DNA of 63,341 nt, filler included, from Octopus bimaculoides (Eukaryota): assembly GCF_001194135.2 (NCBI RefSeq). It is 4 parts of 4 records of this genome, joined end to end, with 100 filler letters (N's around TTAATTAATTAA, not from the genome) between each part and the next. Parts side by side here need not be neighbours in the genome. Positions count along the whole stretch, not along the records: positions 43,982 to 63,341 come from NW_026349933.1; 3 more parts are not named here. One strand, given 5' to 3'. Below are positions 43,982 through 63,341 of the stretch, one piece after another (the first letter of the stretch is position 1; every line of letters starts with the position of its first letter). The notes beneath the pieces are model-generated. The model had not been told where the DNA came from and made no database searches. It worked only from the letters and a program-made list of their open reading frames with translations. The position numbers and the translations under genes were made by a program.

Positions 43982-46900
43982 CTCCTCTGTCTTGCTCTTC
44001 TCTGTCTCTCTCTCCCTCTTCCCTCTCCCTCCCTCTTCTCTCTCGCCCTCTCCTCTCTCTCGCTCCTCTCGCTCCCCTCTCTCTCGCAATTCTGTCTCTC
44101 TCTCGCTCCTCTCTCTCACTCGTCTCTCTCTCGCTCGTCACTCTCTCGCTAGTCTCTCTCTCGCTCGTCTCTCTCTCGCTCCTCTCTCTCTCGCTCCTCT
44201 CTCTCCCAATCCACTCTCTCTCTCTCACTCTCTCTGTCTCCCTCTCACGCTCTCTCTCAGACTCTCTCTCTATCTCAGACTCTCTCTCTCTCGCTCCACT
44301 CTCTCACTCTCTCGCTCCTCCATCACTCGCTCTTCTCTCTCTCTCTCGCTCCTCTCTTTCTCTCGCTATTTACTCTCTCTTGCTCCAACCTCTCTCTCAC
44401 TCCTCTCTCTCCTTTGCTCGTCTCTCTCTCTCTCTCTCGCTATTCTGTTTCTCTCTCGCTCCTCTCTCTCTGGCTCCACACTCTCTCTCGCTATTCTGTT
44501 TCTCTCTCGCTCCTCTCTCTCTCGCTCCACACTCTCTCTCGCTCCTCTCTTTCCTTAGCTCCTCACTCTCTCGCTCCTCTTTCTCTCTCTGGCTCCTCTT
44601 TCTTTCTCTCGCTCCTCTCTCTCTTTTCATTCTGTCTTGCTCCTCTCCCTCTTCCTTCTCACTCTCTTGCTCCTATCTCGTTCCTCTCTCTCGCCCTATT
44701 CACTCTTATCGTTCCTCTCTCTCTGTCTCGCTCCTCTCACTCTCGCTCTTTTCTCTCTCTCGCTCCGCACTCTCTCTCATTCCTCTATCTCCCTTGCTCC
44801 TATCTCTCTCTCGCTATTTTGTTTCTCTCTCNNNNNNNNNNNNNNNNNNNNNNNNNNNNNNNNNNNNNNNNNNNNNNNNNNNNNNNNNNNNNNNNNNNNN
44901 NNNNNNNNNNNNNNNNNNNNNNNNNNNNNNNNNNNNNNNNNNNNNNNNNNNNNNNNNNNNNNNNNNNNNNNNNNNNNNNNNNNNNNNNNNNNNNNNNNNN
45001 NNNNNNNNNNNNNNNNNNNNNNNNNNNNNNNNNNNNNNNNNNNNNNNNNNNNNNNNNNNNNNNNNNNNNNNNNNNNNNNNNNNNNNNNNNNNNNNNNNNN
45101 NNNNNNNNNNNNNNNNNNNNNNNNNNNNNNNNNNNNNNNNNNNNNNNNNNNNNNNNNNNNNNNNNNNNNNNNNNNNNNNNNNNNNNNNNNNNNNNNNNNN
45201 NNNNNNNNNNNNNNNNNNNNNNNNNNNNNNNNNNNNNNNNNNNNNNNNNNNNNNNNNNNNNNNNNNNNNNNNNNNNNNNNNNNNNNNNNNNNNNNNNNNN
45301 NNNNNNNNNNNNNNNNNNNNNNNNNNNNNNNNNNNNNNNNNNNNNNNNNNNNNNNNNNNNNNNNNNNNNNNNNNNNNNNNNNNNNNNNNNNNNNNNNNNN
45401 NNNNNNNNNNNNNNNNNGTAAATAACGGAAACTAGCGGAAACAAACGGGAACTAAAGGAAACCTACGAAAACTAACGGAAATAAACGGAAATAACAGAAA
45501 GTAACGGATACTAACAGAAAGTAAAGGAAACTAACGGGAATTAACGGAAACTATCGGAAAGTAACGCAAACTAACGGAAACTATCGGAAAGTAACGGAAA
45601 CTAATGGAAACTAACGGAAACTAACGGGAACTAACGGAAAGTAACGAAACTAACGGAAACGAACATAGATTAACGGAAAGTAACGGAAACGAACGGATAC
45701 TAACGGAAATAACGAAAACTACAGGAACCAACGGAAACTAACGGAAATCAACGAAAATAACAGAAACTAACGGAAAGTAACGGATACTAACGGAAACTAA
45801 CATAAAAAGTAACAGAAACTGACGCAAACTTACGGTAAGTAACGGAAATTAACGGAAACTAACGGGAATTAACGGAATGTAACGGAATCTAACGGAAACT
45901 AACGGAAACTAGCAGAAAGTAACGGAAAGTAACGGAAATTAACTGAAACTATCGGAAAGTAACGGAAACTAACGGAAACTAGCGGACACTAAGGAAAAGT
46001 AACGGAAACTAACGGAAACTAACGGAAGGTAACGGAAAGTAAGGGAAAAAACGGAAAGCAACTGAAACTAACCTAAATAACGGAAACTAGCGGAAACAAA
46101 CGGGAACTAAAGGAAACCTACGAAAACTAACGGAAATAAACGGAAATAACGGAAATAACACAAAGTAACGGATACTAACAGAAAGTAAAGGAAACTAACG
46201 GGAATTAACGGAAACTAACGGAAAGTAACGGAAATTAACGGAAACTATCGGAAAGTAACGCAAACTAACGGAAACTATCGGAAAGTAACGGAAACTAATG
46301 GAAACTAACGGAAACTAACGGGAACTAACGGAAAGTAACGAAACTAACGGAAACGAACATAAATTAACGGAAAGTAACGGAAACGAACGGATACTAACGG
46401 AAATAACGAAAACTACAGGAACCAACGGAAACTAACGGAAACCAACGAAAATAACAGAAACTAACGGAAAGTAACGGATACTAACGGGAACTAACATAAA
46501 AAGTAACAGAAACTGACGCAAACTTACGGAAACTAATGGAAACTAACGGAAAGTAACGGAAATTAACGAAAATAACGGGATCTAATGGAAAGCAACGGAA
46601 AGTAACGGAAAGTAACGGAAAGTAACGGGAACTAACGGTAAGTAACGGAAATTAACGGAAACTAACGGGAATTAACGGAAAGTATCGGTAACTAACGGAA
46701 ACTCACGGAAATTAACGGAATGTAACGGAATCTAACGGAAACTAACGGAGATTAACGGAAACTAACGGAAACTAGCAGAAAGTAACGGAAAGTAACGGAA
46801 AGTAACTCTTTGTCGCCCTCTCTGTCTCTCTCTCAGTCTCTCTCTGTTTCCCTCAATCTCAGTCTCTCTGTCCCTGTCTCTGTCTCTGTCTGTCTGTATT

Positions 46901-49900
46901 TCTTTCACTCTGTCTCCCTCTCCAAAGAGATGGATGTACGTACGTGCCTAAGTTAATATGTATGCTCCTCTGTCTTGCTCTTCTCTCTTTCGCTACACTC
47001 TCTCTCTCCCTCTTCTCTCTCTCTCCCTCTTCTCTCTCTCTCTCCCTCTTCTCTCTCTCCCTCTTCCCTCTCTCTCCCTCTTCTCTCTCGCCCTCTCCTC
47101 TCTCTCGCTCCTCTCGCTCCCCTCTCTCACTCGCAATTCTGTCTCTCCCTCGCTTCTCTCTCTCTCTCGCTCGTCTCTCTCTCGCTCATCTCTCTCTCTC
47201 TCGCTCCTCTCTCTCTCTCGCTCCTCTCTCTCCCAATCCACTCTCTCTCTCACTCTCTCTGTCTCTCTCTCACACTCTCTCTCACACTCTCTCTCAGACT
47301 CTCTCTCTATCTCAGACTCTCTCTCGCTCCTCTCTCGCTCTCGCTATTTACTCTCTCTTGCACCACCCTCTCTCTCACTCCTCTCTTCTTTGCTCGTCTC
47401 TCTCTCTCTCTCGCTATTCTGTTTCTCTCTCGCTCCTCTCTCTCTCGCTCCACACTCTCTCTCGCTCCTCTCTTTCCTTAGCTCCTCACTCTCTCGCTCC
47501 TCTTTCTCTCTCTGGCTCCTCTTTCTCTCTCTCGCTCCTCTCTCACTTTTCATTCTCTCTTGCTCCTGTCCCTCTTCCTTCTCACTCTCTTGCTCCTATC
47601 TCGTTCCTCTCTCTCGCCCTATTCACTCTCTATCGTTCCTCTCTCTCTGTCTCGCTCCTCTCACTCTCGCTCTTTTCTCTCTCTCGCTCTGCACTCTCTC
47701 TCATTCCTCTCTCTCCCTTGCTCATATCTCTCTCCCTTGCTCATCTCTCTCTCTCGCTATTCTGTTTCTCTCTCGCTCCTCTCTTTCCCTTGTTCCTCTC
47801 TCTCTCGCTCCTCTCTCCCTCTTTTTTCTCTTGTTTCTCTCCCTCTTCCTCCTCACTCTCTTGCTCCTATTTCTTTCCTCTCTCTATCTTGCTCCTCTCT
47901 CTGTTGCTCCTCTCTCTCTGACTCTCTTACTAATGAAAACTAACGGAAAGTAACGGAAACTAACGAAAGAAACAGAAAGTAACGGAAACTAACGAAAAGT
48001 AACGGAAACTAGCGGAAACTAACGGGAAGTAACGGAAACTAACGGAAATTAACTGAAACTAACGGGAAGTAACGGAAACTAACGGAAGGTAACGGAAAGT
48101 AAGGGGAAAACGGAAACTAACGTAAATAACGGAAACTAGCGGAAACAAACGGGAACTAAAGGAAACCTACGGAAACTAACGGAAACTAACGGAAATAACA
48201 GAAAGTAACGGATACTAACAGAAAGTAAGGGAAACTAACGGGAATTAACGGAAACTAACGGAAAGTAAAGGAAATTAACGGAAACTATCGGAAAGTAACG
48301 CAAACTAACGGAAACTATCGGAAACTAATGGAAACTAACGGAAACTAACGGGAACTAACGGAAAGTAACGAAACTAACGGAAACGAACATAAATTAACGG
48401 AAAGTAACGGAAAGTAACGGATACTAACGGAAACAACGGAAACTAACGGAAACTACAGGAACCAACGGAAACTAACGGAAACTAACGGAAGCCAACGAAA
48501 ATAGCAGAAACTAACGGAAAGTAACGGAAACTAACGGGAACTAACGGAAAGTAACAGAAACTAACGCAAACTTACGGAAACTAACGGAAATTAACGAAAA
48601 TAACGGGATCTAATGGAAAGTAACGGAAACTAACGGTAAGTAACGGAAATAAACGGAAGCTAACGGGAATTAACGGAAAGTATCCGAAACTAACGGAAAC
48701 TCACGGAAACTAACGGAAACTAACGAAAAGTTTCCGTTAGTTTCCGTTACTTTCCGTTGCTTTCCGTTAATTTCCGTTAGTTTCAGTTACTTCCCGTTAG
48801 TTTCCGTTGGTTTCCGTTACTTTACGTCAGTTTCCGTAACTTTCCATAGTTTCCGTTACTTTCCGTTAGTTTTCATTAGTTTCCGTTAGTTTCCGTCATT
48901 TTTCGTTACTTTCCGTTATTTTCCTTCACTTTACGTTAGTTTTCCTTACTTTCCGTTAGTTTTCGTTAGTTTCCGGTAGTTTCCGTGAGTTTTCGTTAGT
49001 TTCCGTTACTTTCCGTTAGTTTACGTTACTTTCCGTTATTTTCCGTTACTGTCCGTCTGTTTCCGTGACTTACGTTAGTTTTCGTTAGTAAGAGCGGTAG
49101 AGAGAGAGGAGCAACTGAGAGAGGAGCAAAAATGAGTAAGAGAGTCTGAGAGAGAGAGAGAGTCTGGGAGAGAGAGAGTCTGTGAGAGAGGGAGAGACAG
49201 AGAGATTGAGAGAGAGAGAGTGGAGTGGGAAAGAGAGGAGCGAGAGAGAGAGGAACGAGAGAGAGATGAGCGAGAGAGAGAGGAACGAGAAAGAGAGGAG
49301 TTTCCGTTATTTTCCGTAAGTTTCCGTTACTTTCCGTTGGTTTCCGTAACTTTCCCTTAGTTTCCGTTACTTTCCGTTATTTTCCGTTACTTTCCGTTAC
49401 TTTCTGTTAATATCCGTTAGTTTCCGTTAGTTTCCGTGAGTTTCCGTTAGTTCCCGTTACTTTCCGTTACTTTCCGTTAGTTTCCGTTAGTTTCCGTTAG
49501 TTTCAGTTACTATCCGTTAGTTTATGTTAGTNNNNNNNNNNNNNNNNNNNNNNNNNNNNNNNNNNNNNNNNNNNNNNNNNNNNNNNNNNNNNNNNNNNNN
49601 NNNNNNNNNNNNNNNNNNNNNNNNNNNNNNNNNNNNNNNNNNNNNNNNNNNNNNNNNNNNNNNNNNNNNNNNNNNNNNNNNNNNNNNNNNNNNNNNNNNN
49701 NNNNNNNNNNNNNNNNNNNNNNNNNNNNNNNNNNNNNNNNNNNNNNNNNNNNNNNNNNNNNNNNNNNNNNNNNNNNNNNNNNNNNNNNNNNNNNNNNNNN
49801 NNNNNNNNNNNNNNNNNNNNNNNNNNNNNNNNNNNNNNNNNNNNNNNNNNNNNNNNNNNNNNNNNNNNNNNNNNNNNNNNNNNNNNNNNNNNNNNNNNNN

Positions 49901-52900
49901 NNNNNNNNNNNNNNNNNNNNNNNNNNNNNNNNNNNNNNNNNNNNNNNNNNNNNNNNNNNNNNNNNNNNNNNNNNNNNNNNNNNNNNNNNNNNNNNNNNNN
50001 NNNNNNNNNNNNNNNNNNNNNNNNNNNNGAGAGAGAGGGCGAGAGAAGGAGAGAGGGCGTGAGAGAGAGACACATTGAGAGAGAGAAAGACAGAGAGAAA
50101 GAGATATTCAGAGAGAGATAGAGAAACAGAGAGATAGAGAAACAGAGAGACAGAGAGTCAGAGATTGAAAGAGAGAGACAGAGAGGGGAGGAAAGAGATA
50201 CTTTCCGTTAGTTTCCGTTACGGGAATTATCGGAACCTAACGGAAAGTAACGGAAAGTAACGGAAACTCAGTCTCTCTCGCTCCTCTAAGGAAAGTTATG
50301 GAAACTAACGGAAAGTAACGGAAACTCTGTCTCTCTCGCTCCTCTCTCTTTTGCTGCACTCTCTCTCCCTCTTCTCTCTCTCCCTCTTCCCTCTCTCACC
50401 CTCTTCACTCTCTCTCTCTCTTCTCTCTCTCCCTCTTCTCTCTCTCTTTCTCTCACTCTTCTCTCTCTCCCTCTTCTGTCTCTCTCCCTCCTCTCGCTCC
50501 TCTCTCTCACTCCTCTCTCACTTGCTCCACTCTCTCACTCTCTCGCTCCTCCAGCACTCACTATTCTCTCTCTCTCGCACCTCTCTTTCTCTCGCACTTT
50601 TCTCTCTCTCCTCTCTCTCCCTTGCTCCTCTCTTTCTCGCTATTCTTTTTCTCTCTCGCTCCTCTCTCTCTCTCGCACCTCTCTCTCTCGCTCCTCTCTC
50701 TCTCGCTCTTCTCTCTCTCGCTCCACACTCTCTCTCGTTCCTCTCTTTCCATTGCTCCGCTCTCTCTCGCTCGTCTTTCTCTCTCTGGCTCGTCTTTCTC
50801 TCTCTGGCTCGTCTTTCTCTCTCTCGCTCTCTTCTCCCTCTCCCTCTCCCTACTCTCCCTTGCTCCTCTCCCTCCACTCTCTTGCTCCTCTCCCTCTGCC
50901 TCCTCACTCTCTTGCCCCTATCTCGTTCCTCTCTCTATCTTGCTCGTATCATTTTTGCTCCTCTCTCTGTTGCTCCTCACTCTCTACCGCTCTTACTAAC
51001 GAAAAGTAACTTACAGTAACGGAAACTAACGGAAACTAGCGGAAACTAACGGAAACTAGCGGAAACTAACGGAAAGTAACGGAAAGTAACGGAAACTAGC
51101 GGAAACAAACGGAAAGTAACGGAAACTAAAGGAAAGTAACGTAAACTGACGCAAACCAACGGAAATTAACGGAAACATAGGAAAATCACGGAAAGTATGG
51201 AAGGTAACGGAAACTAACGGAAACTAACGAAAAGTAACGGAAGCCAACGGAAACTAACGGAAACAAACAGAAACTAGCGGGAACGAACGGAAACTGATGA
51301 AAACTAAGGAAAAGTAACGGAAACTAACGGACCCTAACAAGAACTAACGGAAATAACGGAAACTAACGGAAGGTAACGGAAAGTAACGGAAACTAACGGA
51401 AAGTAGCGGGAACGAACGGAAACTGGTGAAAACTAAGGAAAAGTAACGGAAACTAACGGACTCTAACAAGAACTAACGGAAGGTAACGGAAACTAACGGA
51501 AAGGAACGGAAACTAACGGAAAGCAACGGAAACTAACGGAAAGTAACGGAAACTAACGGAAATTAACGGAAAGTTACGGAAACTAACGGAAAGTAACGTA
51601 AATTAACGGAATCTAACGAAGAGTAACGGAAAGTAACTCTTTCTTGCCCTCTGTCTCTCTCTCTTTCTCTCAGACGCTCTGTTTTCTCTCTGTCTCTGTC
51701 TCTGTCTCTATTTCTGTCTCTCTGTCAACCTCTCTCGAGAGAGAGAGATGGATGTACGTACGTGCCTACGTTAATATGCATGCTCCTCTCACTTGCACTT
51801 CTCTGTCTATCTCGCTCCTCTCACTTTCGCTGCGCTCTCTCTCCCTCTTCTCTCTCTTTCGATAAGCTCTCTCTCTCCCTCTTCTCTCAGTCTCCCTCTT
51901 CTCTCTCTCTACCTCTTCTCTCTCTCCCTCAACTCTCTCTCTCCCTCTTCTCTCTCTCTCGCTCCTCTCTCTCTCGCACATCTCTATCTCTCGCTCCACA
52001 CTTTCTCGCGCTCTTCTCTCTCCCTTGCTCCTCTCTCTCTCTCGCTATTCTGTTTCTCTCTCGCTCCTCTCTCTCTCGCTCCTCTCTTTCCCTTGCTCCT
52101 ATCACTCTCGCTCCCCTTTCTCTCTCTCGCTCCTCTCTCACTCTCCCTCCTCTTTCTCTCTTGCTCCACTTCCTCTTCCTCCTCACTCTCTTGCTCATAT
52201 CTCATTCCTCTCTCTATCTTGCTCCTATCATTTTTACTCTTCTCTCTGTTGCTCCTTTCTCTCTACCGCTCTTACTAACGAAAAGTAACGGAAAGTAACG
52301 GAAACTAAAGGAAAGTCACAGAAACTAACGGAAAGTAAAAGAAACTAACGGAAACTAACGGAAAGTAATGGAAACTAACGTGAAACTAAGGGAAAGTAAC
52401 GGAAACTAATGGAAACTAAGGAAACTAACGATGACGGAAAGTATCGGAAACTAACGGAAAGTAACGGAAACTAACGGGAACTAACGAAAACTAACGATGA
52501 CTCACGGAAACTAACGGAAACACGGACACTAACGGAAAGTAATGGAAAGTAACGGGAAATAATGGAAATTAACGGAAAGTAACGGAAAGTAACGGAAACA
52601 AACGGAAACTAACGGGAAATAACGGAAAGTAATGGAAACTAACGGAAACTAACGGAAACTAAAGGAAACTAACGGAAACTAACGGAAACTAACGGAAACT
52701 TAAGGAAACTTACGTAAAACTAACGGAAACTAACGGAAACTAGGGAAAATCTCGGAAACTGACGGAAAGTAACGGAAAGCAACGGAAACTAACGGAAACT
52801 CACGGAAACTAACGGAAACTAACGAAAAGTAACGGAAACCAACGGAAACAAACCGAAAGTATCGGGAACTAACGGAAAGTAGCGGAAACGAACGGAAACT

Positions 52901-55900
52901 GGTGAAAACTAAGGAAAAGTAACGGAAACTAACAGAAAGTAACGGAAACTAACGGAAACTAACGGAAACTAACGGGAATTCACGGAAACTAGCAGAAAGT
53001 AACGGAAACTAACGGAAATTAACGGAAAGTAACGGAAACTAACGGGAACTAACGGAAAGTAATGGAAAGTAACGGAAACTAACGGAAACTAACGGATACT
53101 AACGGAAAGTAACGGGAACTAACGGAAATTAACGGAAAGTAACGGAAACTAACGGAAAGCAATGGAAACTAACGGAAAGTAACGGAAACTAACGGAAACT
53201 AACGGAAAGTAACGTAAATTAACGGAATCTAACGGAGAGTAACGGAAAGTAACTCTTTCTCGCCCTCTGTCTGTCTCTCTCTCTTTCTCTCAGTCCCTCT
53301 GTTTTCTCTCTGTCTCTGTCTCTGTCTGTATTTCTGTCTCTCTGTCTACCTCTCTCGAGAGAGAGATGGATGTATGTACGTGCCTACGTTAATATGCATG
53401 CTCNNNNNNNNNNNNNNNNNNNNNNNNNNNNNNNNNNNNNNNNNNNNNNNNNNNNNNNNNNNNNNNNNNNNNNNNNNNNNNNNNNNNNNNNNNNNNNNNN
53501 NNNNNNNNNNNNNNNNNNNNNNNNNNNNNNNNNNNNNNNNNNNNNNNNNNNNNNNNNNNNNNNNNNNNNNNNNNNNNNNNNNNNNNNNNNNNNNNNNNNN
53601 NNNNNNNNNNNNNNNNNNNNNNNNNNNNNNNNNNNNNNNNNNNNNNNNNNNNNNNNNNNNNNNNNNNNNNNNNNNNNNNNNNNNNNNNNNNNNNNNNNNN
53701 NNNNNNNNNNNNNNNNNNNNNNNNNNNNNNNNNNNNNNNNNNNNNNNNNNNNNNNNNNNNNNNNNNNNNNNNNCTCTCTTGCTCCACTTCCTCTTCCTCC
53801 ACACTCTCTTGCTCATATCTCATTCCTCTCTCTATCTTGCTCCTATCATTTTTACTCTTCTCTCTGTTGCTCCCTTCTCTCTACCGCTCTTACTAACGAA
53901 AAGTAACGGAAAGTAAAAGAAACTAACGGAAACTAACGGAAAGTAATGGAAACTAACGTAAAACTAAGGGAAAGTAACGGAAACTAATGGAAACTAAGGA
54001 AAGTCACGGAAACTGACGGAAAGTATCGGAAACTAACGGAAACTAACGGGAACTAACGGAAACTAACGATGACTCACGGAAACTAACGGAAACACGGACA
54101 CTAACGGAAAGTAATGGAAAGTAACGGGAAATAACGGAAACTAACGGAAAGTAACGGAAAGTAACGGAAACAAACGGAAACTAACGGGAATAACGGAAAG
54201 TAATGGAAACTAACGGAAACTAACGGAAACTAAAGGAAACTAACGGAAACTAACGGAAAGTGGCGGAAACTTACGTAAAACTAACGGAAACTAACGGAAA
54301 CTAGGGAAAATCTCGGAAACTGACGGAAAGTAACGGAAAGCAACGGAAAGCAACGGAAACTCACGGAAACTAACGGAAACTCACGGAAACTAACGGAAAC
54401 TAACGAAAAGTGACGGAAACCAACGGAAACAAACCGAAAGTATCGGAACTAACGAAAGTAACGGAAACTAACGGAAAGTAGCGGAAACGAACGGAAACTG
54501 GCGAAAACTAAGGAAAAGTAACGGAAACTAACTGACTCTAACGGGAACTAACGGAAATAACGGAAACTAATGGAAGGTAACGCAAAGTAACGGAATCTAA
54601 CGGAAAGTAGCGGGAACGAACGGAAACTGGTGAAAACTAAGGAAAAGTAACGGAAACTAACGGACCCTAACAAGAACTAACGGCAATAACGGAAACTAAC
54701 GGACTCTAACAAGAACTAACGGAAAGTAACGGAAACTAACGGAAAGCAACGGAAATTAACGGTAAGCAACGGAAACTAACGGAAAGCAACGGAAACTAAC
54801 GGAAAGCAACGGAAACTAACGTTAATAACTGAAACTAGCGGAAACGAACTGAAACTAAAGGAACCCTTCGGAAACTAAAGGAAACAAACGGAGATAACAG
54901 AAATAACAGAAAGGAACGGAAACTAACAGAAAGTAATGGAAAGTAACGGAAACTGACGGAAACTAACATTAAGTAACGGAAACTAACGGATACTAACGGA
55001 AAGTAACGGGAACTAACGGAAACTAACAGAAACCTACGAAAATAACGGAAACTAATGGAAAGCAATGGAAACTAACGGAAAGTAACGTAAATTAACGGAA
55101 TCTAACGGAGAGTAACGGAAAGTAACTCTTTCTCGCCCTCTGTCTGTCTCTCTCTCTTTCTCTCAGTCCCTCTGTTTTCTCTCTGTCTCTGTCTCTGTCT
55201 GTATTTCTGTTTCTCTGTCTACCTCTCTCGAGAGAGAGATGGATGTACGTACGTGCCTACGTTAATATGCATGCTCCACTCTCTTGCACTTCTCTGTCTA
55301 TCTCGCTCCTCTCACTTTCGCTGTGCTCTCTCTCCCTCTTCTCTCTCTTTCGATAAGCTCTCTCTCCCTCTTCTCTCAGTCTCCCTCTTCTCTCTCTCTA
55401 CCTCTTCTCTCTCTCCCTCATCTCTCTCTCTCCCTCTTCTCTCTCTCGCACATCTCTCTCTCTCGCTCCACACTCTCTCTCGATCTTCTCTCTCCCTTGC
55501 TCCTCTCTCTCTCTCGCTATTCTGTTTCTCTCTCGCTCCTCTCTCTCTCGCTCCTCTCTTTCCCTTGCTCCTATCACTCTCGCTCCCCTTTCTCTCTCTC
55601 GCTCCTCTCTCACTCTCCCTCCTCTTTCTCTCTTGCTCCACTTCCTCTTCCTACTCACTCTCTTGCTCATATCTCATTCCTCTCTCTATCTTGCTCCTAT
55701 CATTTTTACTCTTCTCTCTGTTGCTCCTTTCTCTGTACCGCTCTTACTAACGAAAAGTNNNNNNNNNNNNNNNNNNNNNNNNNNNNNNNNNNNNNNNNNN
55801 NNNNNNNNNNNNNNNNNNNNNNNNNNNNNNNNNNNNNNNNNNNNNNNNNNNNNNNNNNNNNNNNNNNNNNNNNNNNNNNNNNNNNNNNNNNNNNNNNNNN

Positions 55901-58900
55901 NNNNNNNNNNNNNNNNNNNNNNNNNNNNNNNNNNNNNNNNNNNNNNNNNNNNNNNNNNNNNNNNNNNNNNNNNNNNNNNNNNNNNNNNNNNNNNNNNNNN
56001 NNNNNNNNNNNNNNNNNNNNNNNNNNNNNNNNNNNNNNNNNNNNNNNNNNNNNNNNNNNNNNNNNNNNNNNNNNNNNNNNNNNNNNNNNNNNNNNNNNNN
56101 NNNNNNNNNNNNNNNNNNNNNNNNNNNNNNNNNNNNNNNNNNNNNNNNNNNNNNNNNNNNNNNNNNNNNNNNNNNNNNNNNNNNNNNNNNNNNNNNNNNN
56201 NNNNNNNNNNNNNNNNNNNNNNNNNNNNNNNNNNNNNNNNNNNNNNNNNNNNNNNNNNNNNNNNNNNNNNNNNNNNNNNNNNNNNNNNNNNNNNNNNNNN
56301 NNNNNNNNNNNNNNNNNNNNNNNNNNNNNNNNNNNNNNNNNNNNNNNNNNNNNNNNNNNNNNNNNNNNNNNNNNNNNNNNNNNNNNNNNNNNNNNNNNNN
56401 NNNNNNNNNNNNNNNNNNNNNNNNNNNNGGCGAAAACTAAGGAAAAGTAACGGAAACTAACTGACTCTAACGGGAACTAACGGAAATAACGGAAACTAAT
56501 GGAAGGTAACGCAAAGTAACGGAATCTAACGGAAAGTAGCGGGAACGAACGGAAACTGGTGAAAACTAAGGAAAAGTAACGGAAACTAACGGACCCTAAC
56601 AAGAACTAACGGAAATAACGGAAACTAACGGAAGGTAACGGAAACTAACGGACTCTAACAAGAACTAACGGAAAGTAACGGAAACTAACGGAAAGCAACG
56701 GAAACTAACGTTAATAACTGAAACTAGAGGAAACGAACTGAAACTAAAGGAACCCTTCGGAAACTAAAGGAAAGAAACGGAGATAACAGAAATAACAGAA
56801 AGGAACGGAAACTAACAGAAAGTAAATGAAACTAACGGAAACTAACGGGAACTAACGGGAATTCACGGAAACTAGCAGAGAGTAACGGAAACTAACGGAA
56901 ATTAACGGAAAGTAACGGAAACTAACGGGAACTAACGGAAAGTAATGGAAAGTAACGGAAACTAACGGAAACTAACATTAAGTAACGGAAACTAACATTA
57001 AGTAACGGAAACTAACGGATACTAACGGAAAGTAACGGGAACTAACGGAAACTAACAGAAACCTACGAAAATAACGGAAACTAACGGAAAGCAATGGAAA
57101 CTAACGGAAAGTAACGGAAACTAACGGAAAGTAACGGAAACTAACGGAAATTAACGGAAAGTAACGGAAACTAACGGAAAGTAACGTAAATTAACGGAAT
57201 CTAACGGAGAGTAACGGAAAGTAACTNNNNNNNNNNNNNNNNNNNNNNNNNNNNNNNNNNNNNNNNNNNNNNNNNNNNNNNNNNNNNNNNNNNNNNNNNN
57301 NNNNNNNNNNNNNNNNNNNNNNNNNNNNNNNNNNNNNNNNNNNNNNNNNNNNNNNNNNNNNNNNNNNNNNNNNNNNNNNNNNNNNNNNNNNNNNNNNNNN
57401 NNNNNNNNNNNNNNNNNNNNNNNNNNNNNNNNNNNNNNNNNNNNNNNNNNNNNNNNNNNNNNNNNNNNNNNNNNNNNNNNNNNNNNNNNNNNNNNNNNNN
57501 NNNNNNNNNNNNNNNNNNNNNNNNNNNNNNNNNNNNNNNNNNNNNNNNNNNNNNNNNNNNNNNNNNNNNNNNNNNNNNNNNNNNNNNNNNNNNNNNNNNN
57601 NNNNNNNNNNNNNNNNNNNNNNNNNNNNNNNNNNNNNNNNNNNNNNNNNNNNNNNNNNNNNNNNNNNNNNNNNNNNNNNNNNNNNNNNNNNNNNNNNNNN
57701 NNNNNNNNNNNNNNNNNNNNNNNNNNNNNNNNNNNNNNNNNNNNNNNNNNNNNNNNNNNNNNNNNNNNNNNNNNNNNNNNNNNNNNNNNNNNNNNNNNNC
57801 CACACTCTCTCTCGCTCCTCTCTTTCCCTTGCTCCTATCACTCTCGCTCCCCTTTCTCTCTCTCGCTCCTCTCTCACTCTCCCTCCTCTTTCTCTCTTGC
57901 TCCACTTCCTCTTCCTCCTCACTCTCTTGCTCATATCTCATTCCTCTCTCTATCTTGCTCCTATCATTTTTACTCTTCTCTCTGTTGCTCCTTTCTCTCT
58001 ACCGCTCTTACTAACGAAAAGTAACGGAAACTAACGGAAAATAACGGAAAGTAATGGAAACTAACAAGAACTAACGGAAATAACGGAAACTAACGGAAGG
58101 TAACGGAAACTAACGGACTCTAACAAGAATTAACGGAAAGTAACGGAAACTAACGGAAAGCAACGGAAACTAACGGTAAGCAACGGAAACTAACGGAAAG
58201 CAACGGAAACTAACGTTAATAACTGAAACTAGCGGAAACGAACTGAAACTAAAGGAACCCTTCGGAAACTAAAGGAAACAAACGGAGATAACAGAAATAA
58301 CAGAAAGGAACGGAAACTAACAGAAAGTAAGGGAAACTAACGGAAACTAACGGAACCTAAAGGGAATTCACGGAAACTAGCAGTAAGTAACGGAAACTAA
58401 CGGAAATTAACGGAAAGTAACGGAAACTAACGGGAACTAACATTAAGTAACGGAAACTAACGGATACTAATGGAAAGTAACGGGAACTAACGGAAACTAA
58501 CAGAAACCTACGAAAATAACGGAAACTAACGAAGAGTAACTGAAACTAACGGAAAGTAACGGAAACTAACGTAAAATTAACGGAAAGTAACGGAAACTAA
58601 CGGAAAGTAACGTAAATTAACGGAATTGAACGGAGAGTAACGGAAAGTAACTCTTTCTCGCCCTCTGTCTGTCTCTCTCTCTTTCTCTCAGTCCCTCTGT
58701 TTTCGCTCTGTCTCTGTCTGTATATCTGTCTCTCTGTCTCCCTCTCTCGAGAGAGAGATGGATGTACGTACGTGCCTACGTTAATATGCATGCTCCTCTC
58801 TCTTGCACTTCTCTATCTATCTCGCTCCTCTCACTTTCGCTGCTCTCTCTCTCTTCCTCTTCTCTCTCTTTCGCTAAGCTCTCTCTCTCCCTTTTCTCTC

Positions 58901-61900
58901 AGTCTCCCTCTTCTCTCTCTCTACCTCATATCTCTCTCTCCCTCATCTCTCTCTCTCCCTCTTCTCTCTCTCTCCCTCCTCTCGCTCTTCTCTCTCTCGC
59001 ACATCTCTCTCTCGCTCCACACTCTCTCTCGCTCTTCTCTCTCCCTTGCTCCTATCACTCTCGCTCCCTTTCTCTCTCTCTCCCTCATCTCTCTCTCTCT
59101 CCCTCTTCTCTCTCTCTCCCTCCTCTCGCTCCTCTCTCTCTCGCACATCTCTCTCTCTCGCTCCACACTCTCTCTCGCTCTTCTCTCTCCCTTGCTCCTC
59201 TCTCTCTCGCTATTCTGTTTCTCTCTCGCTCCTCTCTCTCTCCACACTCTCTATAGCTCCTCTCTTTCCCTTGCTCCTATCACTCTCGCTCCCCTTTCTC
59301 TCTCTCGCTCCTCTCTCACTCTCCCTCCTCTTTCTCTCTTGCTCCTCTTCCTCCTCACTCTCTTGCTCATATCTCATTCCTCTCTCTATCATTTTTGCTC
59401 TTCTCTCTGTTGCTCCTTTCTCTCTACCGCTCTTACTAACGAAAAGTAACGGAAAGTAACGGAAACTAACGGAAAGTAACAGAAAGTAACGGAAAGTAAA
59501 AGAAACTAACGGAAACTAACGGAGACTAACGTAAAAAAACGGAAACAAACGGAAACTAACAGAAACTAACGGAAAGTAACGGAAACTAACGGAAAGTAAC
59601 GGAATCTAACGGAAACTAACAGAAACTAACGGGAACTAACGGAAAGTAATGGAAATAATCTGAAAGTAACGAAAACTAACGGAAACTAACGGAAAGTGAC
59701 GAAAACTAACGGAAACTAACGGAAACTAACGTAAAACTAACGGACAGTAACGGAAACTAACGGAAATTAACGAAAACTAACAGAAAGTAAGGGAAACTAA
59801 CGGAAACTAACGGAAACTAATGATAAGTAACGGAAACTAACGGAACGCAGCGGAAACTAACGGAAAGTAATGGAAACTAACGTAAAACTAAGGGGAAGTA
59901 ACGGAAACTAATGGAAACTAAGGAAAGCCACGGAAACTGACTGAAAGTATCGGAAACTAACGGAAAGTTACGGAAGCTAACGGGAACTAACGGAAACTAA
60001 CGGAAACTAACGATGACTCACGGAAACTAACGGAAACACGGATACTAACGGAACGTAATGGAAAGTAACGGAAAATAACGGAAAGTAATGGAAACTAACG
60101 GAAAGTAACGGAAACTAACGGAGACTAAAGGAAACTAACGGAAACTAACGGAAACTAACGGAAAGTGACGGAAACTTACGTAAAACTAACAGAAAGTAAC
60201 GGAAACTAAGGAAATTCACTGAAAATGACGGAAAGTAACGGAAAGCAACGGAAACTAACGGAACCTCACGGAAACTAACGAAAAGTAACGGAAACCAACT
60301 GAAACAATCCGAAAGTGTCGGGAACTAACGGAAACTAACGGAAAGTAGCGGAAACGAACGGAAACTGGCGAAAACTAAGGAAAACAAACGGAAACTAACT
60401 GACTCTAACGGAGATTAACAGAAATAACGGAAACTAACGGAAGGTAACGGAAAGTAACGGAAGGTAACGGAAAGTAACGGAATCTAACGGAGAGCAACGA
60501 AAACTAACGGAAAGCAACGGAAACTAACGGAAATAACGGAAACTACCGGAAACGAACGGGAACTGAAGGAACCCTTCGGAAACTAACGGAAACAAACAGA
60601 GATAAAGGAAATAACAGAAAGGAACGGAAACTAACAGAAAGTAAGGGAAACTAACGGACACTAACCGAAACTATTAGAAAATAACGGAAACTAAAGGAAA
60701 GTAACGGTAAGTAACGGAAACTAACGGAAACTAACGGGAACTAACGGAAACTAACGAAAAATAACGTAAGGCAACGGAAATTAACGGAAACTAACAGAAA
60801 CTAACGGAAAGTAACGGAAACTAACGGAAACTAACGGAAACTAACGGAAACTAACTCTTTCTCGCCCTCTCTGTCTCTCAGTCTCTCTCTTTCACTCAAT
60901 CTCCGTCTCTCTGTCTCTGTCTCTGTCTCTCTGTATTTCTGTCTCTCTGTCTCCCTCTCTCGAGAGAGAGAGGAATGTACATAGGTGCCTACGTTAATAT
61001 GTATGCTCCTCTCTCTTGCTCTTCTCTGTCTCTCTCGTTCTTCTCTTTCGCTGCGATCTCTGTCCCTCTTCTCTATCTTTCGCTGCGCTCTCTCTCTCCC
61101 TCTTCTCTCTCTCTCCCTCCTCTCTCTCTCCCACTTCTCTCTCTCTCACTCTTTTCGCTCCTATCTCTCTCGCACTTCTCGCTCTCTCACGCTCCGCTCT
61201 CTATCACGCTCCGCTCTCTCTCGTTCCTCCCTTTCTCGCTCATCTCTCTCACTCTCGTTTCTCTCTCTCACGCTCCTCTCTCTCAATCGCTCCTCTCTCT
61301 CCCACTCCACTTTGTCTCTCTCTCTCACTCTTTCTCTGCCTCTCATTCTTTTTTCTCTCGCAGACTTTTTCTCTCTCAGACTCTCTCACACCCTCCTCTC
61401 TCTCTCTCCTCTCTCTCGCTCCTCTCTCTCGCTTCTCGCTCACTTGCTCCACTCTCTCTCTCTCGCTCCTCCATCACTCGCTCTACTCTCTCTCTCGCTC
61501 CTCTCTTTCTCTCGCTCCTCTCTTTCTCTCGCTCCTCTCTCTCGCTCCACTCTCGCTTCTCGTTCACTTGCTCCACTCTCTCTTTCTCGCTCCTCCATCA
61601 CTCGCTCTACTCTCTCTCTCGCTCCTCTCTCTCTCGCTCCTCTCTTTCTCTCGCTCCTCTCTCTCGCTCCTCTCTCTCGCTTCTCGCTCACTTGCTCCGC
61701 TCTCTCTCGCTCCTCCATCACTCGATCTACTCTCTCTCCCGCTCCTCTCTCTATCTATCGCTCCTCTCTTTCTCTCGCTCTTTTGTGTCTATCGCTCTTC
61801 TTTGTCTCTCTCGCTCTCTTTCTCTCAGTCGCTCCTCTCTCCCTCCTCATTCACTTTCTCGCTCCTCTCTCCCTCCTCATTCTCTCTTGCGCCTCTCCCT

Positions 61901-63341
61901 CTTCCTCCTCAGTCTCTTGCTCCTATCTCGTTCCTCTCTCTATCTTGTTCCTATCATTTTTGCTCTTCTCTCTGTTGCTCATCTCTCTCAACTGCTCTTA
62001 GTAACGAAAAGTAACGGAAAGTAACGGAAACTAACGGAAAGTAACGGAAACTAACGGAAAGTAACGGAAAGTAACGGAAACTATGGGAAACTAACGGAAA
62101 CAAACGGAAAGTAACGGAAACTAACGGAAAGTAACAGAAAGTAACGGAAACTAACGGAAAGTAATGGAAACTAACGCAAACAAACGGAAAGTAACGGAAA
62201 CTAAAGGAAAGTAACGGAAAGTAACAGAAACTAACGGAAAGTAACGGAAACTAACGAAAACTCACGGAAAGTAACGGAAACTAACGGAAAGAAACGGAAA
62301 CTAACGGAAATTAACAGAAAGTAAGGGAAACTAACGGAAACTAGCAGAAACTAAGGAAAAGTAAGGGAAACTAGCGGAAACTAACGGGAACTAACGGAAA
62401 TAACGGAAACTAACGGAAGGCAACAGAAAGTAACGGAAACTAACGGAAAGTAACGGAAACTAACTGAAAGTAACGGAATCAAACGGAAAGTAACGGGAAC
62501 AAACGGAAAGTAATGCAAACTAACTGAAGGTAACGAAAACTAACGGAAACTAAAGGAAAGTGACGAAAAGTAACGGAAAGTGACGAAAAGTGACGGAAAC
62601 TAACGGAAACTAACTGAAAGTAACGAAAACGAAACTGACGGAGACTAACGGAAAGTGACGGAAACTAACGGAAACTAACGGAAACTAACGTAAAACTAAC
62701 GGAGAGTAACGGAAAGTAACGAAAAGTAACGGAAACTAACATGAAGTAACGGAAACTGACGGAAAGTAACGGAAACTAACGGACACAAACGGAAACTAAG
62801 GAAAAGTAACGGAAACTAACGGAACCTAACGGGAACTAACGGATATAACGGAAACTAACGGAAGGTAACGGAAACTAACGGACACTAACGGAAACTATCG
62901 GAAAGTAACGGAAAATAACGGGAACTAACGGAAAGTAACGGAAACTAACGGAAAGTACCGTAAATTAAAGGAAAGTAACGGAAACTAACAGAACCTAACG
63001 GAAGGTTACGGAAAATAACGGAAACTAACGGGAACTAAATGAAACTAACGTAAGGCAAGGGAAAGTAACGGAAACTAACGGAAAATAAAGGAAACTAACT
63101 CTTTCTCGCCCTCTCTGTCTGTCTGTCCCTGTCTCTGTCTCTGTCTGTCTGTATTTCTTTCACTCTGTCTCCCTCTCGAGAGAGATGGATGTACGAAGGT
63201 TCCAACGTTAATATGTATGCGCCTCTCTCTTGCTCTTCTCTGTTTCTCTCGCTCCTCTCTCTTTCGCTGCGGTCTCTCTCCTCTCTCTTTCGCTGCACTC
63301 TCTCTTTCCCTCTTCTATCTCTCTCCCACTTCTCTCTCTCC
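43982..63341. repeat. Composite macrosatellite: alternating 10-bp AACGGAAA(C/G)T arrays and CT-rich blocks with a conserved linker
   Basis: CT-block starts ((G/C)TAACTCTTT..CGCCC) at 46802, 51633, 53249, 55122, 57221, 58647, 60851 and 63095. CT blocks end in CTCTTACTAACGAAAAGT. Runs off the window end. Confidence 0.92.
48731..50220 (-). repeat. Inverted segment within the macrosatellite
   Basis: TTTCCGTTAG repeats and GA-rich blocks (49090-49300, 50029-50200). Both junctions lie in called sequence. Confidence 0.85.

What the first reader, a model, noticed from the sequence alone, without database searches (positions are those of the whole stretch)
43982..63341. Two-component macrosatellite alternating a purine-rich 10-mer and a pyrimidine-rich block
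Seen in sequence: at least about 10 units over 19 kb. Each has roughly 0.6-1.4 kb of AACGGAAA(C/G)T and roughly 0.6-1.1 kb of CT-rich sequence built on CTCGCTCCT(CT)n, with fixed junction words GTAACTCTTTCTCGCCC and CTACCGCTCTTACTAACGAAAAGT. Successive starts from 51633 are 1616, 1873, 2099, 1426, 2204 and 2244 bp apart (some span gaps). The R/Y skew flips within every unit. Inference: two simple repeats were captured into one amplified unit, a candidate centromeric, pericentromeric or subtelomeric satellite. Polypyrimidine blocks can form H-DNA (established property of such tracts). I do not recognise this as a named family.
Basis: partly seen in the sequence, partly recalled or inferred. Interest (0 to 1): 0.75.

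Follow-up and report, generated by a model that had tools for sequence, protein, structure and literature searches.

The report
Two-domain kilobase tandem repeat (macrosatellite)
This 19-kb stretch is a real, non-coding tandem repeat whose 1.4-2.3 kb units each join a purine-rich 10-base array to a pyrimidine-rich CT block through fixed junctions and a small unique core; it is an ordinary kind of satellite DNA, and its chromosomal role could not be tested here.

Summary
From 43982 to 63341 there are nine direct arrays of TAACGGAAA(C/G), about 888 copies and 71-74% purine. They alternate with ten CT-rich blocks that are 11-17% purine.

Both junction words recur 7-8 times, where shuffles give none.
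- a conserved CTGT-rich stretch of about 95 bp after junction J1;
- a unique palindrome-rich core of about 40 bp in every complete unit;
- an inverted, rearranged segment at 48729-50232.

The CT blocks of different units are homologous (94-100% among neighbours). The order of 10-mer variants is also conserved between neighbouring units (z = 20-82 against shuffled order). So whole units were copied after the 10-mer arrays had already diverged. Two unit subfamilies occur: type I (units 3-7) is flanked by type II (units 0, 1, 8, 9).

At the four gaps in the direct part, the flanks lie on the same strand and in the expected order, and the gap lengths are plausible.

There are no genes, Pfam domains, tRNAs, Rfam families or telomere repeats. 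No relatives turned up in any collection I could search, and none of those collections holds eukaryotic genomes or repeat libraries.

Verdict: a real composite satellite, and a new member of a known kind. The centromeric or subtelomeric reading is unsupported.

The parts
43982..44831 (+). B0: CT-rich block, cut at the piece edge on the left and by a gap on the right; subfamily II
   Evidence: 12% purine; 97.6% identical to B1 over 331 bp
44832..45417 (.). Assembly gap (586 N). It spans the end of B0, J2 and the start of A0
   Evidence: Flanks map to 47734(+21) and 48122 of unit 1, same strand and order; 366 bp predicted
45418..46801 (+). A0: 10-mer array of 139 units, with an internal duplication of about 655 bp
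   Evidence: TRF score 1472; 71% purine; internal duplication with 37 of 41 tokens identical
46802..47945 (+). B1: J1 (46802-46818), CTGT-rich stretch, core (46930-46968), long CT block holding a 92-nt pure pyrimidine tract (46998-47089), and a diverged J2 (47922-47945); subfamily II
47946..48728 (+). A1: 10-mer array of 79 units. It ends head-to-head against an inverted array
   Evidence: In register with A0, z = 57
48729..50232 (-). Inverted, rearranged partial units: reverse-complement 10-mers (48729-49076), reverse-complement J2 (49077-49100), GA-rich sequence (49101-49298), reverse-complement 10-mers (49299-49531), gap (49532-50028), then GA-rich reverse complement of the J1/CTGT region (50029-50232)
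   Evidence: Only 83-89% identical to the direct units, and the arms around 48728/48729 are not copies of each other, so this is not a simple fold-back artefact
50233..50328 (+). Short direct 10-mer runs interleaved with two copies of CTCTCTCGCTCCTC (a 58-bp duplication)
   Evidence: 50242-50287 and 50300-50345 are 95.7% identical
50329..51007 (+). B2: CT block lacking J1, the CTGT stretch and the core; ends with J2 (50984-51007)
51008..51632 (+). A2: 10-mer array of 62 units
   Evidence: In register with A4 (z = 20) and A5 (z = 14.5)
51633..52286 (+). B3: complete subfamily I CT domain with J1 (51633), core (51748-51786) and J2 (52263-52286)
   Evidence: 94.3% identical to B5 over 637 bp
52287..53248 (+). 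A3: 10-mer array of 96 units
   Evidence: In register with A4, z = 82; 86.4% over 938 bp against about 80% off register
53249..53904 (+). B4: J1 (53249), core (53366-53404), gap (53404-53773, 370 N), distal CT block and J2 (53881-53904)
   Evidence: Flanks are 99% and 97% identical to unit 5; 351-370 bp predicted missing
53905..55121 (+). A4: 10-mer array of 122 units
   Evidence: In register with A3, A5, A6 and A7
55122..55758 (+). B5: complete subfamily I CT domain with J1 (55122), core (55239-55277) and J2 (55735-55758)
55759..57226 (+). A5: gap (55759-56428, 670 N) followed by 80 10-mer units (56429-57226); the last bases are the start of J1
   Evidence: Right flank is 99.5% identical to 54500-54699; 595 bp predicted missing; z = 68 against A4
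57227..58022 (+). B6: gap (57227-57799, 573 N), then the distal CT block and J2 (57999-58022)
   Evidence: 100% identical to B3 over 218 bp
58023..58646 (+). A6: 10-mer array of 62 units
   Evidence: z = 66 against A5
58647..59447 (+). B7: subfamily I CT domain with an internal duplication of about 125 bp; J1 (58647), core (58758-58796), J2 (59424-59447)
   Evidence: Two overlapping HSPs against B3
59448..60850 (+). A7: 10-mer array of 140 units
   Evidence: TRF score 1546; partly in register with A3 and A4, z = 25-38
60851..62012 (+). B8: subfamily II CT domain; J1 variant CTAACT... (60851), diverged core (60971-61009), 124-bp higher-order period x4.3 (61392-61929), diverged J2 (61989-62012)
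62013..63094 (+). A8: 10-mer array of 108 units, not in register with any other array
63095..63341 (+). B9: J1 variant (63095), diverged core (63185-63223) and the start of the CT block; cut by the piece edge
   Evidence: 91% identical to B1 over 135 bp

Best explanation
This is a genuine, non-coding composite satellite (macrosatellite).

The ancestral unit, read on the + strand, was:
1. J2;
2. the (TAACGGAAAS)n array;
3. J1;
4. a CTGT-rich stretch of about 95 bp;
5. the palindrome CTCTCTCGAGAGAG;
6. a unique core of about 40 bp;
7. a CT-rich block;
8. a non-repetitive distal segment of about 130 bp.

It turns over on two levels.
- Shown: whole units of 1.4-2.3 kb are duplicated head to tail. 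Inferred mechanism: unequal exchange or gene conversion between misaligned units. This produced a local expansion of subfamily I (units 3-7) inside older subfamily II units (0, 1, 8, 9).
- Shown in part, mechanism inferred: inside each domain, slippage and small unequal exchanges add and delete 10-mers, 17/32/124-bp CT sub-repeats and larger internal segments. This changes unit length and erases register between older units.

Nothing in the sequence indicates a product. Its most likely cellular state is repeat-rich, probably heterochromatic DNA.

Inferred effects only: the alternation of a purine-rich and a pyrimidine-rich strand segment every 1-2 kb gives some capacity for triplex (H-DNA) formation in the CT domain, and a 10-bp-phased array of one short motif in the other domain.
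For: Tandem order is seen inside gap-free contigs. Contig 57800-63341 holds three J2 and three J1 in strict alternation; 50029-53403 holds two of each.

The copies differ from one another, so they are separate genomic copies rather than one copy reused. CT domains are 81-100% identical, and the junction alignments have 79-81% mean column identity with subfamily-specific variants.

Whole-unit amplification:
- The order of 10-mer variants is conserved between arrays: A3-A4 z = 82, A4-A5 z = 68, A5-A6 z = 66, A0-A1 z = 57.
- In-register base identity is 86-99.5%, against about 80% off register.
- Individual 10-mers match their consensus only about 77%.

Internal turnover: a 655-bp duplication in A0, a 124-bp higher-order period in B8, a duplication of about 125 bp in B7, and array lengths of 62-140 units.

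Non-coding:
- TAA recurs every 10 bp, so it falls in all three frames of the purine arrays.
- ORFs in the CT blocks are low-complexity L/S strings with no Pfam match.
- There are no tRNAs, no Rfam family and no related protein among 5.8 and 1.84 billion sequences.

Strand asymmetry and mirror repeats.
Against: The assembly is gapped: five N runs, all inside repeat blocks. The number and order of units may therefore be wrong, and the inverted segment 48729-50232 may be a misjoin.

I could not search eukaryotic genomes, Dfam or Repbase, so a transposon-derived or already catalogued origin is not excluded.

Arrays A8 and A0/A1 share no register with A2-A7. The 'single ancestral array' step therefore rests on the junctions and CT domains only.
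Confidence: 0.75

Rival explanations
1. Assembly artefact. A few dispersed or short repeat loci were chained and scaffolded into an apparent 19-kb array, or a much longer array was collapsed and shuffled.
For: There are five gaps, each inside a repeat block. One region is scrambled and inverted, with a head-to-head 10-mer junction at 48728/48729 and a CT block lacking J1 and the core. A0 carries a 655-bp internal duplication that could be a mis-assembly.
Against: Head-to-tail alternation with distinct sequence variants is present inside uninterrupted contigs of 3.4, 4.1 and 5.5 kb. Gap flanks fit the unit order and strand, and the predicted lengths are within about 0-220 bp of the N counts. 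The inverted part is 83-89% identical to the direct units and is not a near-identical fold-back.
Confidence: 0.12
2. Transposon-derived array. The unit is, or derives from, a non-autonomous mobile element carrying two internal tandem-repeat regions, as in Helitron- or MITE-borne satellites of molluscs. It later became tandemised.
For: Each unit has conserved non-repetitive parts between the two arrays that could be remnants of an element: J1 to the core, about 155 bp, and the distal 130 bp plus J2. Knowledge-based lead: such satellite-carrying elements are described in bivalves.
Against: No terminal inverted or long terminal repeats, no poly(A), no target-site duplications and no coding capacity were seen. 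Units abut directly with no foreign flank anywhere in 19 kb. No dispersed copy could be looked for.
Confidence: 0.08
3. Functional chromosomal satellite. The array is the species' centromeric or pericentromeric repeat, or a subtelomeric one. The 10-bp-phased YAACGG motif and the CT/GAGA tracts act as binding platforms.
For: The array is tandem with kilobase-scale units, at least 19 kb long, and open at both ends. It holds 505 matches to the MYB-site consensus YAAC(G/T)G with a modal spacing of 10 bp (consensus as quoted in PMC2797782). These are compatible with the idea, not evidence for it.
Against: There is no positional, chromatin or abundance information at all. No telomere repeat is present. 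Motif matches follow automatically from a repeated 10-mer.
Confidence: 0.1

Closest known systems
Macrosatellites (for example human D4Z4, DXZ4, RS447); from my own knowledge
   Same: Tandem head-to-tail arrays of kilobase-scale units, with unit-level homogenisation and local subfamilies.
   Different: Those units are mostly complex sequence, some with ORFs (DUX4 in D4Z4) or CTCF sites. Here about 90% of each unit is two internal short-period arrays, and unit length varies from 1.4 to 2.3 kb.
Complex G+C-rich satellite of the land crab Gecarcinus lateralis (unit about 2.1 kb; work of Skinner and colleagues in the 1980s); recalled from memory, papers not found in the library
   Same: A satellite unit of about 2 kb in which conserved domains alternate with variable domains made of homopurine/homopyrimidine and other simple tracts. 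Length variation is concentrated in those tracts, and non-B DNA potential has been proposed.
   Different: No sequence relationship was tested or is expected. The crab unit has no 10-mer array occupying half the unit.
Higher-order repeat satellites (for example primate alpha satellite)
   Same: Two-level organisation: diverged short monomers (about 77% matches here), with much higher identity between higher-order copies (86-100%).
   Different: Here the higher-order unit joins two unrelated repeat types and unique junctions, not multimers of one monomer.
Sub-repeat arrays in rDNA intergenic spacers
   Same: Blocks of different short sub-repeats in a fixed order within each copy of a tandem kilobase-scale unit.
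   Different: No rRNA gene or any Rfam family lies in the 19 kb, and the unit is far shorter than an rDNA repeat.
(GA/CT)n and polypyrimidine tracts that form H-DNA
   Same: The CT domain holds pure pyrimidine runs of up to 92 nt and 24 perfect mirror repeats.
   Different: Most of the domain is interrupted every 6-12 nt by G or A (CTCTCTCGCTCC). Mirror arms are only 10-15 nt.

Membership tests
Satellite DNA / macrosatellite | Units arranged head to tail in tandem | tested here: met
   J1 and J2 alternate 7-8 times on the + strand, including within gap-free contigs
Satellite DNA / macrosatellite | Unit of 1 kb or more, homologous over its whole length between copies | tested here: met
   J1-to-J1 spacing of 1426-2244 bp. 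CT domains are 81-100% identical. Arrays are in register, z = 20-82
Satellite DNA / macrosatellite | Long arrays or high copy number in the genome | not testable with these tools
Satellite DNA / macrosatellite | No protein-coding or structured-RNA content | tested here: met
   Pfam 0, Rfam 0, tRNA 0, no homologous proteins
Centromeric satellite | Association with CENP-A chromatin or the primary constriction | not testable with these tools
   No chromatin or cytological data
Subtelomeric repeat | Adjacency to telomere repeats or a chromosome end | tested here: not met
   No TTAGGG/CCCTAA dimer in the piece. The flanks of the array are not in the piece, so this is weak evidence
H-DNA-forming tract | Homopurine-homopyrimidine mirror repeat | tested here: met
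   24 perfect pyrimidine mirror repeats with arms of 10-15 nt and spacers of 8 nt or less, against 2.4 in shuffles. The longest pure pyrimidine tract is 92 nt
H-DNA-forming tract | Actual triplex formation under supercoiling | not testable with these tools
   Needs S1 nuclease or chemical probing
Transposable element | Terminal repeats, target-site duplications or transposition genes | tested here: not met
   None seen in direct reading or among the ORFs. Solitary copies elsewhere could not be searched for
Already catalogued repeat family (Repbase/Dfam/literature) | Sequence match to a named family | tested here: inconclusive
   No paper in the library holds any 15-mer of the 10-mer dimer.

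The most novel reading that the evidence does not exclude
The array is the host's principal centromeric or pericentromeric satellite. Its architecture may matter for chromatin organisation or for strand-specific transcription and R-loop or triplex formation. That architecture is a 10-bp-phased array of YAACGG (MYB/SANT-type) sites alternating every 1-2 kb with a CT/GAGA-type polypyrimidine domain of opposite strand bias. If so, it would be a bipartite centromere repeat not described before.
Probability: 0.08. Interest if true: 0.6.

Novelty: new member of a known kind. Interest (0 to 1): 0.3.

Why it matters
If the family proves abundant, it would be a well-resolved example of a satellite whose unit of amplification is a fusion of two unrelated short-period arrays with opposite strand composition. 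That makes it useful for three things:
- studying two-level repeat turnover;
- use as a cytogenetic or assembly-quality marker in a large, repeat-rich genome;
- testing non-B DNA formation in vivo.

As it stands, it is a clean description of one more lineage-specific satellite and changes no general view.

Tried and rejected
- **Sequencing runs.** No read depth, long-read or RNA evidence is available.
- **Exact-protein look-ups.** Five CT-block ORFs were looked up and nothing is on record.
- **Protein searches with the ORF spanning core to J2.** The 5.8-billion set gave no hit. The 1.84-billion set gave four weak low-complexity matches that are unrelated on inspection.
- **Core word in metagenome contigs.** Two hits, both chance matches inside unrelated AT-rich coding DNA. 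It has no hit in prokaryotic genomes.
- **10-mer trimer.** It has no hit in viral contigs. In prokaryotic genomes there are three hits, all 3-6-copy intergenic runs in bacterial MAGs and unrelated.
- **Literature.** No paper contains the repeat's 15-mers. An 8-mer search returned only primers. Cephalopod satellite and centromere searches found nothing relevant. The crab-satellite papers are not in the library.
- **Coding, tRNA and Rfam readings.** Rejected.
- **Hairpin at the core.** Not significant, z = -1.8.
- **Fold-back (missed-adapter type) artefact at 48729.** Rejected, because the arms are not copies of each other.
- **CpG-decay signature as evidence of methylation.** Not seen: C4-to-T is 4.6% and G5-to-A is 8.3%, against 7.1% for G6-to-A at a non-CpG site.
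Full report

Yes. The piece 43982-63341 holds 16,664 read bases and five N runs.

- TRF reports nine direct 10-bp arrays with consensus TAACGGAAAC, scoring up to 1546. They alternate with CT-rich arrays of period 2/15/17/32.
- J1 (GTAACTCTTTCTCGCCC) occurs 7 times with at most 1 mismatch. J2 (CTACCGCTCTTACTAACGAAAAGT) occurs 8 times with at most 3 mismatches, one of them on the minus strand. Dinucleotide-preserving shuffles give 0.00 for both.
- Purine arrays are 71-74% purine. CT blocks are 11-17% purine, so the R/Y skew flips in every unit.

**2. Gaps, tested first**

I mapped 200-nt flanks of each gap onto the rest of the piece. For the four gaps in the direct part, both flanks lie on the + strand and in the order a unit predicts.

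| Gap | N count | Missing length predicted from closest homologous unit |
|---|---|---|
| 44832-45417 | 586 | 366 |
| 53404-53773 | 370 | 351-370 |
| 55759-56428 | 670 | 595 |
| 57227-57799 | 573 | 408-425 (589 if like unit 7) |

These gaps are therefore consistent with simple unread stretches of the same array. The fifth gap (49532-50028) sits in an inverted, rearranged region, and its continuity cannot be judged.

**3.

Between J1 and the CT block, every complete unit carries three further elements:
- a conserved CTGT-rich stretch of about 95 bp;
- the perfect palindrome CTCTCTCGAGAGAG;
- a unique core, ATGGATGTACGTACGTGCCTACGTTAATATGCATGCTCC.

The core has 7 copies, where shuffles give 0. 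The last 130 bp or so of the CT domain before J2 are also non-repetitive and conserved.

The CT domain is a mosaic rather than one motif:
- pure CT/CCCT runs near the core, with a longest pure pyrimidine tract of 92 nt at 46998-47089;
- CTCTCTCGCTCC-type 17/32-bp repeats in the middle;
- a 124-bp higher-order period x4.3 in B8.

**4. Is the composite unit what gets amplified?**

Three lines of evidence say yes.

- *CT domains are homologous over their length.* B3-B5 are 94.3% identical over 637 bp, B3-B6 100% over 218 bp, and B0-B1 97.6% over 331 bp.
- *The 10-mer arrays share variant order.* I parsed them into 888 units with a wrap-around alignment. The consensus is TAACGGAAA[C 58% / G 30%], and 36% of units are exact. 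Treating each variant as a token, local alignment of token strings between arrays far exceeds 30 shuffles of token order:

| Array pair | z |
|---|---|
| A3-A4 | 82 |
| A4-A5 | 68 |
| A5-A6 | 66 |
| A0-A1 | 57 |
| A4-A6 | 36 |
| A3/A4-A7 | 25-38 |
| A2-A4 | 20 |

  Pairs across the groups (A0/A1 against A2-A7, and A8 against all) are at noise level.
- *In-register identity beats the background.* At base level it is 86-99.5%, against about 80% for off-register alignments. Single 10-mers match their consensus only about 77%.

So the 10-mer arrays had already diverged when whole units were copied, and older units have since lost register through internal turnover.

Junction variants define two subfamilies:
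- Type I covers units 3-7. It has core ...ATGCATGC and a CT domain of 0.64-0.80 kb.
- Type II covers units 0, 1, 8 and 9. It has core ...ATGTATGC, J1 variant CTAACT in units 8 and 9, and a CT domain of about 1.15 kb.

Type I units are flanked by type II units, as a local expansion would leave them.

**5. Irregularities**

- At 48729 the direct array A1 meets an inverted 10-mer array head to head. The following sequence, to 50232, holds a reverse-complement J2, GA-rich stretches and a reverse-complement J1/CTGT region.
- B2 (50329-51007) lacks J1 and the core.
- The inverted material is only 83-89% identical to any direct unit, and the arms around 48729 are not copies of each other. It is therefore not a simple fold-back artefact.
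- It may be a true inversion inside the array or a contig-level misjoin. Only long reads can decide.
- A0 contains an internal duplication of about 655 bp.

**6. What it is not**

- The purine arrays carry TAA every 10 bp, which falls in all three frames.
- ORFs in the CT blocks are L/S low-complexity strings with no Pfam match.
- There are no tRNAs, no Rfam family and no telomere repeat.
- The ORF spanning core to J2 has no relatives among 5.8 billion proteins. Among 1.84 billion it has only four unrelated low-complexity matches.
- Five exact look-ups found nothing.

**7. Relatives elsewhere**

- The core word hits two metagenome contigs, both chance matches in unrelated DNA.
- It has no hit in prokaryotic genomes.
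- The 10-mer trimer has no hit in viral contigs.
- In prokaryotic genomes the 10-mer trimer occurs only as 3-6-copy runs in three bacterial MAGs.
- No paper in the library contains the repeat's 15-mers. Searches on cephalopod satellites and centromeres found nothing relevant.
- None of these collections holds eukaryotic genomes or repeat libraries, so 'unrecognised' is not the same as 'new'. The organism could not be identified.
Copy number, long-read validation and transcription are therefore untested.

**8. How it most likely works**

- *Shown:* this is a tandem array of composite units, with unit-level duplication and within-domain length change.
- *Inferred:* the mechanisms are unequal exchange or conversion between misaligned units, plus slippage and small unequal exchanges within domains. 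This is the established model for satellite turnover.
- *Inferred:* the DNA has no product and is probably packaged as repeat-rich chromatin.
- *Potential properties only.* The CT domain has moderate triplex capacity: 24 perfect pyrimidine mirror repeats with arms of 10-15 nt, against 2.4 in shuffles. Each 10-mer carries the MYB-site consensus YAAC(G/T)G, as quoted in PMC2797782. There are 505 such sites, with a modal spacing of 10 bp, about one helical turn. The latter follows automatically from the repeat and is a lead, not evidence of binding.
- The CpG of the 10-mer is not preferentially decayed.

**9. Comparison and verdict**

It works like a macrosatellite or higher-order repeat. The closest classical analogue I can recall is the land-crab complex satellite of about 2.1 kb, with conserved domains interleaved with purine/pyrimidine simple tracts. 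That is from memory and untested.

It meets the tested defining features of a satellite: tandem order, kilobase-scale homologous units, and no coding content. Abundance and location remain untestable here.

The proposal that two simple repeats were 'captured' is not shown, and in-situ expansion fits equally well. The centromeric, pericentromeric or subtelomeric reading has no support yet.

Novelty: a new member of a known kind. Interest is modest.

Noticed in passing
window 46930-46968, 51748-51786, 53366-53404, 55239-55277, 58758-58796, 60971-61009, 63185-63223: A unique core of about 40 bp in every complete unit, packed with short palindromes (TACGTA, ACGT x3, TTAA, ATGCAT, GCATGC). It is preceded by the perfect palindrome CTCTCTCGAGAGAG. 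It is the only non-repetitive, non-skewed sequence in the unit. Its single-strand fold is not significant (z = -1.8).
   Followed up: partly
window 48729-50328: An inverted, scrambled segment inside the array: a head-to-head 10-mer junction, a reverse-complement J2, GA-rich pieces, and a 58-bp duplication at 50242-50345. It is either a real inversion or a misjoin.
   Followed up: partly
window 45418-46801 (A0): An internal duplication of about 66 units (about 655 bp) within one 10-mer array; 37 of 41 aligned variant tokens are identical.
   Followed up: yes
all direct 10-mer arrays, e.g. window 59448-60850: Every 10-mer contains the MYB-binding-site consensus YAAC(G/T)G: 505 sites in 8878 bp, with a modal spacing of 10 bp (consensus quoted in PMC2797782). 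Position 10 tends to alternate between C and G: G follows G 18% of the time, against 41% after C. This gives a weak 20-bp dimer.
   Followed up: partly
all direct 10-mer arrays: The CpG in the 10-mer is retained in 86-88% of copies. Its transitions (C-to-T 4.6%, G-to-A 8.3%) are no more frequent than at the neighbouring non-CpG G (7.1%). There is therefore no signature of methylation-driven decay.
   Followed up: yes
window 53404-53773: The N run of 370 equals exactly the length missing by homology with unit 3 (51786-52155). This may be coincidence, or a hint about how gap sizes were set.
   Followed up: no
L005 3880-4120; L003 2655-2700; L004 1075-1115: Bacterial MAG contigs (Elusimicrobia, Opitutaceae, Clostridia) carry short intergenic runs of the same AACGGAAA(C/G)T 10-mer. 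In L005 direct copies are followed by inverted copies. They are unrelated to the satellite, and may be iteron-like or regulatory repeats.
   Followed up: no
window 61392-61929 and 58946-59190: The CT domains have their own higher-order structure: a 124-bp period x4.3 in B8, and a duplication of about 125 bp in B7 relative to B3.
   Followed up: partly
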